64,000 bases of DNA from Magallana gigas (taxonomy: Eukaryota): positions 992,001 to 1,056,000 of the forward strand of contig NC_088861.1 in NCBI RefSeq assembly GCF_963853765.1. Reading direction: 5' to 3'. The notes beneath the pieces were generated by a model, which worked only from the letters and a program-made list of their open reading frames with translations, was not told the DNA's origin and made no database searches. Below, one piece after another: positions 15,968-20,837 of this stretch. The stretch's first letter is position 1. Each line of letters begins with the position of its first letter. A program made the position numbers and the translations under genes.

Positions 15968-16652
15968 AATAAAAGCATGCAGTAAAAAATTATCCAAAAT
16001 TAAGACATTCAGTATAATAAAATAAACAGTTCCAGTTTGGGACATGTATACATGTATATGAGCTAGTTCACAAAACTAAGGTAGTACAAAACAGATAAGC
16101 TTAAATTTTCCTACTGTCAATTTTTAACACAATAAACAAAATGCAGATAGAAATATTTATATTTTTTTGGAAATGTTTTCGTTATGCGTTAGGGGAGCGT
16201 TGCCATTGCGCTTTTATGACGTTATGATAAAATAATTTAATTATGGTTGTAACGCGGCATTCGATAGAAAAATTTAGTATAACCTGGTTTGCACGTCACA
16301 AGAAACGTCACAATGCACCAACGTCAAAAACGTACTAATCCGCTTTACATTACGTTTGAAATTTGAACAGACTATTATCATCTTTGACTCAATTTGTACC
16401 GCAAATTACAGAAAATTAAATTATACGGAATGAACTTAATAGAGAGGTTAAGCATTTGACCGTGTACGTGTACGCGTACGTGTAGAGTTAGAAGTAAAAT
16501 TACAAGTACCCGTATCTAACGCTGCGTTCTGTTAAGCAAACTGCACGTGTACGCCTACGTGTAGAGGAAGATGTCACGTCATATTTGATTGGATGAAAAA
16601 TTGAAATAAACTAATCAAAATCAGTGTTTGATCAATACGATCGTAAATAAAA

Positions 16653-17693
16653 ATGGCTCAATCTATGATGTTGCTTGCATCGCTGGAAGGTGATGATGAC
16701 CTTTTACTGCTTTCATGTATGGATGACGACAAAGAATCATCAATTTATCATAAGTTAGGAATTGATGAACTCAGCGAAGAACAATTCCGTACATTATTCA
16801 GATTTAAGAAAGAAGACATATGTGCTTTGTGCGATGCTTTAGGCATACCTGTCAAAATTGTTTGCAAGAATAGAACTGTATGCACGGGAATAGAAGGTTT
16901 GTGCATCCTTATACGTAGATTAGCATACCCGAATAGATTGCAAGATCTTTCACACGTGTTTGGAAGATCAACAGCTGAAATATCCTATATCTTTAATACG
17001 GTTTTAGACCTTATAGATTCAATCCACGGACATAAATTGGAAAACTTGCATCAGCCGTGGTTGTCCCACGCGAAACTTGACGAGATGGTTGCAGCTGTCA
17101 ACCAATGTGGGGCACCCCTTGTAAATTGCTGGGGGTTTATCGACGGAACCGTGAGGCCCATATGCAGACCACAATCTCATCAGCAATTGGTATTCAATGG
17201 ACATAAAAGAGTACATGGTCTTAAATTCCAATGCATTACGACACCTGACGGAATGATTGCTCATATGTTTGGTCCAATTGAAGGCCGCCGTCATGATGCA
17301 GGTATGCTAAGAGAAAGCGGTGTTGAACAACAAATGCAACATCATATGACAAAAGCAAATGGTGAAGTCTACTCAGTCTACGGTGACCCCGCCTATCCAT
17401 TATCCCCATACGTAATTCCCCCCTTTCGAGGAGCTGTTATATCAGCGAATCAGATGCGTTTTAACAAAAAGATGTCAGCTCTCAGAGTATGCGTAGAATG
17501 GACTTTCGGCAAAATTCTAACTTTGTTTGCTTTTCTTGACTATAAGAAAAATCAAAAATTGTATTTACAGCCTGTCGGAAAATATTACAGAGTAGCAACT
17601 ATTCTAACCAACTGCCACACCATTTTGTATGGTAGTGAAACCGGTTCATTCTTTGATGTCTCCCCGCCATTTCTTCACGAATATTTGGCCTAA
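16653..17693 (+). CDS. Harbinger-family DDE transposase (DDE_Tnp_4/HARBI1-like), 346 aa, intronless
   Basis: N-terminal HTH-like region (FRTLFRF...LRRLAYPNRLQDLSHVFGRS). Catalytic motifs GFIDGT, FNGHKRVHGLKFQ, GRRHDAGML, YGDPAYP, RVCVEWTFG. No stops. Confidence 0.95.
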   Translation: MAQSMMLLASLEGDDDLLLLSCMDDDKESSIYHKLGIDELSEEQFRTLFRFKKEDICALCDALGIPVKIVCKNRTVCTGIEGLCILIRRLAYPNRLQDLSHVFGRSTAEISYIFNTVLDLIDSIHGHKLENLHQPWLSHAKLDEMVAAVNQCGAPLVNCWGFIDGTVRPICRPQSHQQLVFNGHKRVHGLKFQCITTPDGMIAHMFGPIEGRRHDAGMLRESGVEQQMQHHMTKANGEVYSVYGDPAYPLSPYVIPPFRGAVISANQMRFNKKMSALRVCVEWTFGKILTLFAFLDYKKNQKLYLQPVGKYYRVATILTNCHTILYGSETGSFFDVSPPFLHEYLA

Positions 17694-17886
17694 AATAACT
17701 CATTTGTCATCAGTTGAAAAAACTAACTAAGTATTTTATTTGTTCCGCTTACCTTTAACTACCTTATGTTGCTGTCTTATTTAATGAAAACAATGGACTA
17801 TTTCCAACAGGAAAAAAAATTGAATTTGTGTTTCAATCTATTAAATTGAAGAAAAAAACAATATCAAAGGGTATTGTTATTTGTGT

Positions 17887-19022
17887 TTATTTATTGTTTG
17901 TTAGTGTCTTCAACAAATCCATGAATGCAATTTTCTCCTGTTTTTCTATTTCCATCCTTTGGAGTCTCTCCTCCCGGTCGAGGTCGAATTGTGCCTTCTG
18001 TAATCTAAGTTCTTCTTTTCTCAATTCTAACTCCGTTCTCTTTGTTGCCATCTCCATTTCTGATTTCTCCTTTAAAAAATCAACTAAGTAGGTTTGAGAA
18101 TTTCTCCTTTTTGGAATGTCACTCTCATCATCTGTAAAAAAGGAAAGAAATTAGCAATGCATTAGCCCCCCCCCCCCCCCCCCTGAAAAATTATCGAGCG
18201 GCGCATGCGATATGCATGTAACGGGAGTCTGTTCATATTCAAAAAGTTTCATTCAGAAACGTTTCTAAAACATTTTTTGAGGTTATGATTAAGGATATCG
18301 TACCTTTCATTTTGCCAACAGTTGAGTACAGTGTAATATATAGCAAATACTTATTTTACTATAAACCTAGTACATCTTTTATTAATAAAAATAACATGTT
18401 CATACCTTTCTTTGGAGTTAAACACTCCAGGGCTCTTTTTCTTATTTCTTTCCCCAAGTTTTCAGATTTTTCCTTCTTCTCTTTTTCTTCTTTCTTTTCT
18501 CTCTCTTCTTCTTCTTTCAGTTCCATGATTTCATCTAGTAAAGTTGTTCTTTCAGTAACATCTTCATCAACGCCAGATCTGAAAAATTAAACGTGATAAA
18601 AACAATAAAAAGTGGATCAAACACGTTTCATGGATCTAAATAAAATGAGAAAAAGCAAGGATTTATTTTGCGAATTGTGTATATGTTCATGTGTGATAGA
18701 GAGAAAGAGAGATACTATAATTCTGACTGTCTGTCTGTCTATCTCTCTCTCTCTCTATGTTTGGGGGGGGGGGGGGATAAATCCATCTTTTAAAATACCT
18801 TTTAAGATTTTCTCTATTTTCTCGCTTATGTTGTTCAATGAGGAGGTTTGTACGTTCTCTTACTCTCCTAGCATCAAGCACAAACATAGGCGTTGACAAA
18901 ACTGCAGCGACTTCTGTCCATTTGTTTTTATTTTTTATTGGATTTCTCGCAACAACTTCCCTCAGAAGCCTGATGTCATCATCATTCTTAAATCTTATTT
19001 GTTTTTTCCTGTCGAAGTTCAT
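17887..19022 (-). CDS. Myb/SANT-like DNA-binding partner protein of the transposon, 3 exons, 213 aa
   Basis: Exons 18799-19022, 18406-18578, 17887-18131, all GT-AG with compatible phases (642 nt). N-terminus RFKNDDDIRLLREVVARNP...KWTEVAAVL...RRVRERTNLLI, followed by a charged coiled-coil tail. Confidence 0.85.
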
Positions 19023-19892
19023 ATTCGAATCTCACCTAAAATAATAAAACATGTAATTTTACAATGAAATCAAATTTATAAAAAGGGGGGAGGTAAGCAT
19101 CACCTTGGCCCTCCCCCGACAACGCCTTTGTTTTATTGTACATATACAATTACATGTGAGTTTAGCTTCGGTTTAGCGAAGCAGGTGCTCGTGATTGCTC
19201 TTTCAATCTCTGTTAAAGTATTAATAATAAGAATTTAAGGGAATTCACAAGCGCCTGCACAGCTGAACATGCAGGCACATAAAAAATGATAATCAATTAA
19301 AAATTAGCTGGTTTTGATCTGCTATCGTCTATCAATTTTTAAACTAACAGTATAGCGGATCATTTTTACATCAAATTTTAACATACGTAGTAGAGTACAG
19401 TTATATTGGACCGCCGGCAATGTGTTCGTGCCCCCCCCCCCCATCCCGTTCTGTGTTTAAAGATTCATCACAGTTTATGATATATGTGACCTCGAATGTA
19501 TATTGCTAATTTATGGTGTCAATTTAATTGCTAAAAATACGATTAAAGGTTTTTTTAAACTAAATTTCCTCTACAGATGAACGTCTTTTACCAATGTAAT
19601 TTTAAAATCATATTTGATCAAAAAATTCTCTGATTTTAATCAAGTTAGAAATACAATCGTATGAAATGAATCCTCCTCTTTTAAAAAATATATAGTTTTC
19701 ATACAAAAAAAATTCATTTTGAGTGTGAGAAGCTAGAAGTTCTTACCTCCGTGTACTTTTGAATCTACACGATGTTGACAACTTGTAGAATTACGCGGTA
19801 TGCAAAATTGATGACGTAACACGCAGTAAATAAGGGGATTCCCCTTGTCACACGTACGCGTACACGTACACGGTCAAATGCTTAACCTCTCT

Positions 19893-20027
19893 AATATCTA
19901 TCCAAGTTATACTCGTATAACCTGAGTTGGAGCAATTTACGCATTTTTTAACCTTTAACCACTTCTCAGATTATAAAGCGTAAATTGCCCCAACCCAGGT
20001 TATACGAGTATAACTTTGGTAGACATT
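19893..20027. repeat. Core of a palindromic hairpin element, bounded on both sides by Harbinger-type insertions
   Basis: ATCTATCCAAGTTATACTCGTATAACCTGAGTTGGAGCAATTTACGC is inverted to GCGTAAATTGCCCCAACCCAGGTTATACGAGTATAACTTTGGTAGAC. Related to the uninterrupted hairpin at 48625-48770. Confidence 0.85.
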
Positions 20028-20639
20028 AGAGAGGTTTAGCAAACCAACGTGTACGCGTACGTGTACGTGTAGAACGGAAAATATGTGCATTACGTCATCA
20101 GTTTGTGTAATGACGAATTTCTACACGTATGTACCCGACTGAACATACGTGTAAATTGCAAAGTACCCGTAAGGTCGAACTTGTAGCCTCTGTTTCCCTG
20201 TTGTCTATTAATTTTAAGAAATATGTTAACTTTTCTTAAGCCTGAATATTCAATGCGAATGCTGATATCTACCAACATAAATTTTCATTAGCGTTTAATA
20301 TGTTATTGGAGTTTTATTTGACGCATTTCTTCCTCCAAAACATGCAATGGCTCTGTTATCTTATTAATTTGCGATAAATAAAAATGTGCATATATAATAA
20401 ATGATGTTTAATAAAATTAACACATGCAGAATTCCTACTTTTCGTTTATAACCAACATTTTCAGCTTAGTAGGAGAGGATATCCATAATATCCATAATAA
20501 TTATTACATTAAAACATTTACACGTACAAGTACACGTTACAACTGCCAAAAAAGAAAAGTAATTGAGCTGGTACGCGTAGTTCTAACTTGTAACCTACAC
20601 GTACAAGTACACGTACACGTTGGTCTGCTAAACCTCTCT
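20028..20639. mobile_element. Non-autonomous MITE related to the Pangu-like element
   Basis: TIRs AGAGAGGTTTAGCA(A/G)ACCAACGTGTACG; TSD ATT at 20025-20027 and 20640-20642; no coding capacity. Confidence 0.9.
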
Positions 20640-20837
20640 ATTGAGTTCATTTCTCAAATATTTACATTTGCAAATATGTTTCCTTATATGAACCTATAGA
20701 ATGCATTCAATTCTGTATGAACTCTTTCGTGACGTCACAATAATCAATGCACACGCTTATCGCTTGTCGCTTGGATTATTGTAAACATATAATCTCGGTA
20801 ACCTTAACGATTTGTCTTTTTCAAACGTAAAAATAAG

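What the first reader, a model, noticed from the sequence alone, without database searches (positions are those of the whole stretch)
16430..20651. Two different Harbinger/Pangu-type elements inserted at mirror-image sites of one hairpin element: candidate target-specific transposon system
Seen: removing the 3,452-bp autonomous element (TSD AAT) and the 612-bp MITE (TSD ATT) restores a ~160-bp palindrome. Its left arm reads GAATGAACTT-AAT-ATCTA and its right arm (reverse complement) reads AAATGAACTC-AAT-GTCTA, so both insertions hit the equivalent AAT in opposite arms. An uninterrupted relative at 48625-48770 (TAAGTAATGAATTC-AAT-ATTTATT...TTTACGC...AACCGC...TTATAAA...GCGTAAA) shows the hairpin extends past both insertion points. 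The two inserts have different TIRs (GGTTAAGCATTTGACC vs GGTTTAGCAAACCAAC), so one is not a copy of the other. Inference: this family recognises a motif like AATGAAYTYAATRT and targets the termini of another abundant mobile element, a safe-harbour strategy. The Myb/SANT partner might supply the specificity. I do not recall this being described for PHIS elements; established target-specific DNA transposons include Dada.
Basis: partly seen in the sequence, partly recalled or inferred. Interest (0 to 1): 0.8.

Follow-up and report, generated by a model that had tools for sequence, protein, structure and literature searches.

The report
Oyster Pangu transposons nested in a palindrome
Two known-type oyster "Pangu" cut-and-paste transposons sit at mirror positions in the terminal palindrome of another small repeat, but almost all other copies lie elsewhere next to only a short AT-rich motif, so this is at most a local insertion hotspot and not a target-specific transposon system.

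Summary
A 3,452-bp autonomous element (16441-19892, TSD AAT) and a 612-bp MITE (20028-20639, TSD ATT) interrupt the equivalent AAT in the two arms of a ~160-bp palindrome.

The interpretation mostly fails.
- **The elements are known.** They are Pangu-group PHIS transposons, matching the published C. gigas family Pangu_CGig.
- **The "hairpin element" is not free-standing.** It is the 3'-terminal palindrome of a ~375-bp HINE/Helentron-like repeat (window ~16232-20657), with about 890 intact arms genome-wide.
- **There is no long recognition motif.** Of ~400 Pangu copies (776 TIR ends), 35 flanks not selected for their sequence show only A-Y|A-N-T|(R-T). AATGAAYTY does not recur.
- **The mirror coincidence has a simple cause.** The two mirror AATs are the only Y-AWT-R sites in the palindrome.
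- **Pangu copies cluster and nest.** This plausibly explains the double hit.

One thing remains. A third Pangu subfamily (chromosome 4) and an unclassified TIR element (chromosome 10) occupy the same AAT in other copies. That is three Pangu hits against at most 0.08 expected, so a modest hotspot is likely, cause unknown. Fewer than 1% of copies use it.

Target-specific PHIS elements are already described (Harbinger3_DR). The read-based polymorphism test could not be run.

The parts
16232..16440 (+). Host HINE/Helentron-like non-autonomous repeat: its 5' part, up to the first insertion. The 5' end reads ATAATTTAATTATGG. The 3' subterminal inverted repeat is at 16408-16424 (ACAGAAAATTAAATTAT). 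The outer piece of the left palindrome arm is 16425-16440.
   Evidence: An alignment of 29 genomic copies turns 98-100% conserved exactly at the 5' end and stays so through the palindrome. The window sequence matches it.
16438..16440 (.). Target-site duplication AAT of element A, left copy. The right copy is 19893-19895.
   Evidence: Read directly from the sequence.
16441..19892 (+). Element A: an autonomous Pangu-group PHIS transposon of 3,452 bp. Its TIRs are 16441-16483 and 19850-19892 and begin AGAGAGGTTAAGCATTTGACC.
   Evidence: TIRs are 98% complementary. There are 139 TIR matches genome-wide, including three other ~3.45-kb copies. Those copies are 98.5-99.3% identical over the first 1.5 kb.
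16653..17693 (+). ORF1 of element A: a DDE transposase of 346 aa in a single open frame.
   Evidence: Pfam DDE_Tnp_4, E 2.1e-25, matching the full 158-position profile. The motifs DGT, GDPAY and VEWTFG are visible in the translation.
17887..19022 (-). ORF2 of element A: a spliced, Myb/SANT-like accessory gene. Exon 1 is 19022-18801 and the last exon is 18135-17887. A middle Glu/Lys-rich exon lies at about 18590-18408; its borders are inferred by eye.
   Evidence: Exon 1 hits Pfam Myb_DNA-bind_4 at E 0.011, below the cut-off. Atlas neighbours are Myb_DNA-bind_3/4 and MADF clusters at 0.82-0.87, which are leads only. The AF2 model is three helices but low confidence, pLDDT 58.6. Pangu_CGig ORF2 is listed as Myb_DNA-bind_4 in the supplement of PMC4482050.
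19893..20027 (.). Core of the host's 3' palindrome: the inner parts of both arms plus the loop. It lies between the two inserts and is ~91% identical to other copies.
   Evidence: BLAST against the own genome gave 577 candidates, and all 40 scored ones matched at 90-91%. An intact copy folds at -74.4 kcal/mol, z -23.
20028..20639 (+). Element B: a 612-bp Pangu-type MITE. Its TIRs are 20028-20072 and 20595-20639 and begin AGAGAGGTTTAGCAAACCAAC. Its TSD is ATT, at 20025-20027 and 20640-20642.
   Evidence: Many dispersed copies carry the same TIR variant in pairs ~570-600 bp apart.
20640..20657 (+). Outer piece of the right palindrome arm and the 3' end of the host repeat (..ATTGAGTTCATTTCTCAA).
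   Evidence: In 29 copies the consensus ends at GAGTTCATTTCTTAA(A) and is followed by variable flanks.
48623..48767 (-). Uninterrupted palindrome of a related HINE-like subfamily, ~70% similar. The rest of that element lies to its right.
   Evidence: The pattern hits at 48623 and 48752 are.

Best explanation
This is a nest of ordinary mobile elements. An old copy of a ~375-bp HINE/Helentron-like repeat carries a ~155-bp perfect-type palindrome at its 3' end. Two different Pangu-group PHIS transposons entered that palindrome independently: a young, apparently intact autonomous copy (A) and a MITE of a sister subfamily (B).

Pangu transposase makes a 3-bp staggered cut at A-N-T and prefers a short palindromic context, A-Y|A-W-T|R-T. 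The palindrome has only two sites with Y before and R after an AWT. These are the two mirror AATs, so any insertion into either arm lands there.

Why this palindrome was hit at all is only partly explained. The site looks like a modest hotspot, because a third Pangu subfamily and one other TIR element use the same AAT in other copies. Pangu copies also tend to land in or beside resident Pangu copies, which would account for the second hit at this locus.

Shown here: the anatomy, the independence of the inserts, the short target consensus, the counts and the clustering. Inferred: that the excess reflects a real preference, and what causes it. It is not a target-specific system.
For: **Anatomy and TSDs.**

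**Pangu features.**
- The TSD is ANT in 33 of 35 flanks not selected for their sequence.
- The TIRs start with AG.
- ORF1 is DDE_Tnp_4.
- The published Pangu_CGig is 3,616 bp, has an AWT TSD, DDE_Tnp_4 plus Myb_DNA-bind_4, and 71 copies.

**Host repeat.** It is defined from 29 copies. Its 5' end is complementary to the segment just before the 3' palindrome. One nested copy shows no TIR and no TSD.

**Half-site logo.** Information is present only at -5 (A, 25/35), -4 (T 22, C 7) and the A-N-T. Positions -6 to -15 carry 0.15 bit or less.

**Site content of the palindrome.** Only positions 16 and 143 of the 160-nt palindrome are Y-AWT-R.

**Counts.**
- 890 empty arm sites.
- 776 Pangu TIR ends at 2 mismatches or fewer, against 5 for the control.
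- 3 occupied sites, all at the same AAT, and none elsewhere in the outer 30 nt of an arm.
- Expected hits are 0.01-0.08, giving P(3 or more) between 1e-7 and 8e-5.

**Other events at the site.** A fourth TIR element sits at the same AAT in L085.

**Clustering.**
- Nested A-in-A (L009) and A-in-C (L026).
- 4 of 35 flanks carry Pangu-type GTACG repeats, against 1% background.
- My hand tally gives 4 neighbour pairs within 10 kb among 68 elements over ~190 Mb, against ~0.24 expected.
Against: - The enrichment statistic is post hoc for two of the three hits. The only independent Pangu replicate, on chromosome 4, has P of about 0.04-0.08.
- The logo rests on 35 ends, mostly of one subfamily, so a weak longer motif could be missed.
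- All counts are lower bounds.
- The cause of the hotspot is unknown.
- The clustering tally was made by hand from a partial list. Some pairs may be segmental duplicates.
Confidence: 0.6

Rival explanations
1. The hotspot is structural. The long perfect palindrome attracts insertions of several transposon classes, perhaps through cruciform extrusion, fork stalling or breakage, or an unusual chromatin state. The exact nucleotide is then set by each element's own short target preference.
For: - Four different TIR families use the same AAT, and one of them is not clearly Pangu.
- Two of 29 sampled HINE copies are themselves inserted in another copy's palindrome arm, at the same T|ATAAC point (L067, L070).
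- The palindrome is extremely stable as a hairpin: -74.4 kcal/mol, z -23.
- Primary sequence around the site is only a 3/4 match to the Pangu consensus, so sequence alone does not explain a ~40-350-fold excess.
Against: - The products are simple insertions with TSDs in ordinary duplex arms. They are not the rearrangements expected from integration into an extruded stem.
- No insertion was found at other positions of the outer arm.
- The numbers are tiny.
- No experimental link between PHIS transposases and DNA secondary structure is known to me.
Confidence: 0.2
2. Pangu elements, through the transposase or the Myb-like ORF2 protein, specifically recognise the hairpin terminus (AATGAAYTYAATRT) and use the abundant repeat as a safe harbour.
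For: - Three Pangu subfamilies sit at the identical AAT of the same repeat family.
- Both arms are hit at this locus.
- Target-specific relatives exist, for example Harbinger3_DR.
Against: - Only 3 of ~400 copies are in the hairpin, while 890 sites stand empty.
- The other flanks share nothing beyond A-Y|A-N-T.
- The related subfamily palindrome in the window is empty.
- The orientation of the insert relative to the asymmetric site is not fixed. Reading, the C-type copy is flipped relative to A and B.
- No TIR-like AGGTTA motif is enriched near other insertion sites.
Confidence: 0.07
3. This is pure coincidence plus survival bias. Insertions inside dead repeats are neutral and persist, and the first reader noticed a rare but chance arrangement.
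For: - The finding was picked post hoc.
- Only one independent Pangu replicate exists, with P of about 0.04-0.08.
- The mirror placement follows from ordinary site preference.
Against: - Survival bias can give a few-fold excess, not 40-350-fold.
- Two hits in one of ~450 palindromes, a third Pangu hit and a fourth element all at the same phosphodiester are jointly improbable.
Confidence: 0.11
4. This is a local inverted duplication or an assembly artefact. One insertion-bearing arm was copied in inverted orientation, or the assembler folded the region.
For: The whole region is a large imperfect palindrome: arms 16429-16510 with 20570-20651 at 76%, and 19850-19945 with 19975-20070 at 85%. Homologous ends of A and B face the centre.
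Against: - A is 3,452 bp and carries genes, while B is 612 bp.
- Their TIRs differ at 7 of 11 subfamily-specific positions. Each matches its own dispersed family exactly.
- Each insert has its own perfect TSD.
- Mirror orientation has a 50% prior.
Confidence: 0.02

Closest known systems
Pangu group of the PHIS superfamily, in particular Pangu_CGig (Repbase Harbinger-3_CGi) of Crassostrea gigas (Han et al. 2015, PMC4482050)
   Same: - 3-bp ANT/AWT target-site duplication.
- TIRs starting with AG.
- Autonomous length of ~3.5 kb.
- Two genes: a DDE_Tnp_4 transposase and a Myb_DNA-bind_4-like protein.
- The host is an oyster.
   Different: - Element A is 3,452 bp with a 346-aa transposase ORF. The published consensus is 3,616 bp with a 402-aa transposase.
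- Sequence identity to the published consensus could not be checked.
- At least three TIR subfamilies (A, B, C) are present here.
Harbinger3_DR of zebrafish (Sinzelle et al. 2008, as cited in PMC3016246)
   Same: A PHIS-superfamily element with a transposase and a Myb-like partner. It shows real target-sequence specificity.
   Different: Harbinger3_DR integrates almost exclusively into a 15-bp palindromic consensus. Here fewer than 1% of copies are in the candidate target, and only a 7-bp degenerate consensus is visible.
PIF of maize and nested Tourist/Stowaway MITEs. This comes from my own knowledge (Zhang et al. 2001 PNAS; Jiang and Wessler 2001 Plant Cell) and was not read here.
   Same: A short extended palindromic target around the 3-bp TSD, and frequent insertion of MITEs into other MITEs.
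   Different: The TSD is TWA rather than ANT. No reported preference for the palindrome of a rolling-circle element.
HINE / Helentron non-autonomous elements, including Cg_HINE of C. gigas (PMC7492417, PMC4067079)
   Same: The host repeat has a 5' terminal segment complementary to a segment placed just before a 3' palindrome. It has no TIRs and no TSD, it is non-coding, it has hundreds of copies, and copies are found nested or in tandem.
   Different: - The palindrome stem is ~70 bp rather than 5-20 bp.
- There is no internal tandem repeat or microsatellite.
- The flanks suggest A|T rather than T|T insertion.
- No Rep/helicase partner was identified.
Dada, R2 and other truly target-specific elements
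   Same: Insertion into a multicopy sequence.
   Different: In those families essentially all copies lie in the target. That is not the case here.

Membership tests
Pangu group (PHIS superfamily) | 3-bp target-site duplication 5'-ANT-3' | tested here: met
   33 of 35 flanks not selected for their sequence: ATT 17, AAT 11, AGT 3, ACT 2. Matching left and right TSDs are seen for A, B and the chromosome 4 copy.
Pangu group (PHIS superfamily) | TIRs of 11-40 bp starting with AG or GG | tested here: met
   The TIRs start AGAGAGGTT and are 43-49 nt long. That is slightly longer than the published range.
Pangu group (PHIS superfamily) | DDE transposase of the PIF/IS5 type (DDE_Tnp_4) | tested here: met
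   Pfam PF13359, E 2.1e-25.
Pangu group (PHIS superfamily) | A second ORF, listed as Myb_DNA-bind_4 in Pangu_CGig | tested here: inconclusive
   Exon 1 scores E 0.011, below the Pfam cut-off. Atlas neighbours are Myb/MADF clusters below 0.9. The AF2 model shows three helices at pLDDT 58.6.
Pangu group (PHIS superfamily) | Transposase falls in the Pangu clade of a PHIS phylogeny | not tested
   No reference Pangu, PIF or IS5 transposase sequences were available by reference.
HINE / Helentron non-autonomous elements | Subterminal inverted repeats: the 5' end is complementary to a segment upstream of the 3' palindrome | tested here: met
   5' ATAATTTAATTCTGG against the reverse complement of CCAGAAAATTAAATTAT. 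About 15 of 17 positions match by eye, read from the consensus of 29 copies.
HINE / Helentron non-autonomous elements | A palindrome or stem-loop near the 3' end | tested here: met
   It folds at -74.4 kcal/mol. The stem is ~70 bp, far longer than the 5-20 bp described.
HINE / Helentron non-autonomous elements | No TSD, and insertion at TT or T-rich sites | tested here: inconclusive
   The nested copy L070 shows no TSD. The flanks are mostly ..A | T(A).. rather than T|T.
HINE / Helentron non-autonomous elements | An autonomous Rep/helicase (or endonuclease) partner sharing the termini | not tested
Target-specific DNA transposon (Harbinger3_DR or Dada type) | The great majority of copies lie in one conserved target sequence | tested here: not met
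   3 of ~400 copies are in the hairpin. Flanks are otherwise unrelated.

The most novel reading that the evidence does not exclude
The 3' palindrome of this HINE-like repeat is a genuine insertion hotspot shared by several unrelated transposon families: three Pangu subfamilies, one other TIR element, and the HINE itself. The region would be chosen by DNA structure or by a bound protein, and the exact nucleotide by each element's short target consensus. That would be a natural case of structure- or context-guided targeting by eukaryotic DDE transposases.
Probability: 0.25. Interest if true: 0.55.

Novelty: new member of a known kind. Interest (0 to 1): 0.3.

Why it matters
As submitted, the finding would have meant a new target-specific eukaryotic DNA transposon, which would be of interest for safe-harbour gene delivery. 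The evidence does not support that.

What remains is smaller.
- It gives a clean description of the target consensus of oyster Pangu elements, AY|ANT|RT.
- It shows that these elements cluster and nest.
- It hints that one position in the long terminal palindrome of a rolling-circle-type repeat is hit repeatedly by different elements.

If that hotspot proved real and structure-dependent, it would offer a simple natural substrate for asking how PHIS transposases choose targets.

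Tried and rejected
1. **Read laying.** ORF2 was studied through exon 1 and the last exon only.
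2. **Sequencing-run look-up of the A-right/palindrome/B-left stretch.** No run held more than 43% of 21 sampled words. This may reflect TIR words shared with other copies, contig breaks, or polymorphism. No verdict.
3. **Metagenome scan with the junction pattern.** It returned three unrelated chance matches.
4. **Fetching more genomic flanks.** I did not read flanks out through N-padded patterns.
5. **TIR-mimic tethering.** The idea was that an AGGTTA motif in the arms resembles the TIR. It showed no enrichment near other insertion sites: 1 of 35 against 3% background.
6. **Excision footprints.** Only one arm in the genome has the AAT duplicated.
7. **Mismatch-in-cruciform targeting.** The arms differ at the base right after the AAT. 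I rejected the idea because the products are simple insertions in ordinary duplex DNA.
8. **Classifying the chromosome 10 element as Pangu.** Only about 15 of ~75 exact ends are preceded by AWT, so it stays unclassified. It may be Spy-like.
9. **ORF2 structure and sequence searches.** The AF2 model was too weak for a fold search. A PDB sequence search found nothing.
10. **Earlier scan notes.** They held only this same finding.

Full report
**Observation**

Element A spans 16441-19892 (3,452 bp) and is flanked by AAT on both sides. Element B spans 20028-20639 (612 bp) and is flanked by ATT on both sides.

A begins AGAGAGGTTAAGCATTTGACC and B begins AGAGAGGTTTAGCAAACCAAC. A's TIRs are 47 nt and 98% complementary; B's are 49 nt and 92% complementary.

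Without the inserts, the flanks and the 135-bp piece between them form a palindrome. The left arm reads GAATGAACTT-AAT-ATCTATCC and the right arm, reverse-complemented, reads AAATGAACTC-AAT-GTCTACCA. The relative at 48623-48767 is real and uninterrupted.

**What the inserts are**

ORF1 of A (16653-17693) is a DDE_Tnp_4 transposase, E 2e-25. On the other strand lies a spliced gene. Its first exon is weakly Myb_DNA-bind_4-like: E 0.011, supported only by leads and a low-confidence three-helix model.

A genome search with A's TIR found 139 ends. These comprise three further ~3.45-kb copies and many ~420-bp MITEs. The full-length copies are 98.5-99.3% identical over their first 1.5 kb. The transposase frame is open in three of the four, so the family is young.

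In 35 flanks that were not selected for their sequence, the duplication is A-N-T in 33. An ANT TSD, TIRs starting with AG, a length of ~3.5 kb and two genes are the published hallmarks of the Pangu group. Han et al. 2015 list a C. gigas family, Pangu_CGig (Harbinger-3_CGi). It is 3,616 bp, has an AWT TSD, DDE_Tnp_4 plus Myb_DNA-bind_4, and 71 copies.

The genome is 564 Mb in 29 contigs. Oyster-labelled sequencing runs hold the stretch. Both fit an oyster.

A, B and a third subfamily C (AGAGAGGTTGAGATTTMAAAC) share the first nine bases, the GTGTACG repeats and a subterminal block. B's exact TIR variant occurs in many dispersed pairs ~570-600 bp apart. B was therefore not derived from A in place.

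**What the hairpin is**

It is not a free-standing palindromic MITE. In 29 other genomic copies, conservation continues ~210 bp beyond one arm and stops 15 nt beyond the other. The unit is ~375 bp.
- It begins ATAATTTAATTCTGG.
- It carries the complementary CCAGAAAATTAAATTAT just before the palindrome.
- It ends GAGTTCATTTCTTAA(A).
- It has no terminal inverted repeats.
- A copy nested in another copy (L070) shows no target duplication.

This is the architecture described for Helentron-associated HINEs, including Cg_HINE of C. gigas. The stem, however, is far longer (~70 bp; -74 kcal/mol as a hairpin). The flanks also look like A|T rather than T|T. No Rep/helicase partner was sought, so membership is likely but not proven.

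The window copy runs from about 16232 to 20657. It is ~9% diverged from the otherwise near-identical copies.

**Is there target specificity?**

*Flanks.* The 35 unselected half-sites carry information only at the A-N-T and the two bases before it (A 25/35; T 22 and C 7 of 35). Positions -6 to -15 carry 0.15 bit or less. The target consensus is therefore a 7-bp palindrome, AY|AWT|RT. AATGAAYTY does not recur.

*Counts.*
- The genome holds 890 empty arm sites.
- It holds 776 Pangu-type TIR ends, or roughly 400 insertions.
- Only three arm sites are occupied by a Pangu end: the two here, and a C-type MITE at G000:C4:50331913-50332382.
- More than 99% of copies are therefore elsewhere. The "target-specific, safe-harbour" reading fails.

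Target specificity in this superfamily is in any case already known for Harbinger3_DR.

**Why mirror sites?**

In the 160-nt palindrome there are 16 ANT sites. Only two have a pyrimidine before and a purine after an AWT, and they are exactly the two mirror AATs. Any Pangu insertion into an arm is therefore expected to land there. All three Pangu insertions do, and none was found elsewhere in the outer 30 nt of an arm.

**Is the palindrome a hotspot?**

With ~400-800 insertions spread over all AWT or Y-AWT-R sites, 0.01-0.08 hits are expected on the 893 arm sites. Three are seen, giving P between 1e-7 and 8e-5.

Two of the three are the discovery itself. The honest independent test is the single extra hit, with P of about 0.04-0.08.

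Some further observations point the same way.
- A ~1-kb element with different TIRs (GGGGAAGGAAAS) has its right junction at exactly the same AAT in a chromosome 10 copy. Its left junction is imperfect, and the family is not clearly Pangu.
- One arm elsewhere has the AAT duplicated, which may be an excision footprint.
- Two of the 29 sampled HINE copies are themselves inserted at one point of another copy's palindrome.

I take a modest hotspot as likely. Its cause is open.

**Why two in one palindrome?**

Pangu copies cluster.
- Among ~16 independent A-type insertions there is an A nested in an A (L009), an A nested in a C (L026) and a tandem pair (L007).
- 4 of 35 flanks carry Pangu-type GTACG repeats, against 1% background.
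- In the list, I count four neighbour pairs within 10 kb among 68 elements over ~190 Mb, where ~0.24 are expected. This is a hand tally, and some pairs could be duplications.

A second element landing next to a resident one, at the only suitable site within 150 bp, explains the arrangement without any long recognition motif. The greater age of this HINE copy may also have given it more time to collect insertions.

**Rejected alternatives**

An inverted duplication is excluded by the different sizes and contents of A and B. It is also excluded by each insert's exact match to its own dispersed family.

A misassembly is unlikely, given two perfect TSDs. I sent nothing from those places to any search tool afterwards. 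The run look-up for the junction stretch was inconclusive, and a metagenome scan gave only chance matches.

**Verdict**

What is here is a known kind of transposon (Pangu) nested twice in a known kind of repeat (HINE-like). The mirror placement is explained by an ordinary 7-bp target preference. A small, statistically suggestive hotspot remains, and a proper genome-wide test would settle it.

Noticed in passing
L085:508-1507 (G000:C10, about 27452440-27453440): A ~1-kb element with TIRs AAAGGGGAAGGAAAG / AGAGGGGAAGGAAAC sits at the same AAT of a HINE palindrome. About 240 such ends occur genome-wide. The right junction is clean (CCCCTCT|AAT|ATCTACCC). The left junction lacks a TSD copy. The family may be Spy-like (AAA|TIR) rather than Pangu.
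   Followed up: partly
L086, around 1500 (G000:C10:2858884-2858912): A HINE palindrome arm with the target AAT duplicated (ACTCAATAATATCTA). This could be an excision footprint or simple slippage. It is the only such arm found in the genome.
   Followed up: partly
L070 and L067 (G000:C3:52889435-52889685 and G000:C4:19144642-19144771 regions): HINE-like copies inserted into the palindrome arm of another copy, at the same point (TATACnnnT|ATAAC), without a target duplication. This suggests that the rolling-circle-type repeat also favours its own palindrome.
   Followed up: no
L009, L026 and L007 (G000:C1:44953969-44954416, C3:21098677-21099419, C1:1452060-1452525): Pangu MITEs nested in, or abutting, other Pangu MITEs: A in A, A in C, and a tandem pair. 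This points to self-proximal insertion or local hopping.
   Followed up: partly
G000:C1:43644144-43647013: A 2.87-kb element with B-like TIRs (AGAGAGGTTTAGCAAGCCGAC / ..AAACTGAC). It is a possible autonomous partner of the B-type MITEs. It is known only from coordinates in the pattern list, and its sequence was not read.
   Followed up: no
window 18166-18184, 18764-18778, 19428-19442: Long poly-C and poly-G runs of 13-19 nt lie inside the introns and untranslated parts of element A, and pair as inverted repeats. Their significance is unknown.
   Followed up: no
window 48623-48900: A second, more distant HINE-like subfamily lies on the minus strand. Its palindrome is intact and its equivalent site (TTC-AAT-AT) is unoccupied.
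   Followed up: partly
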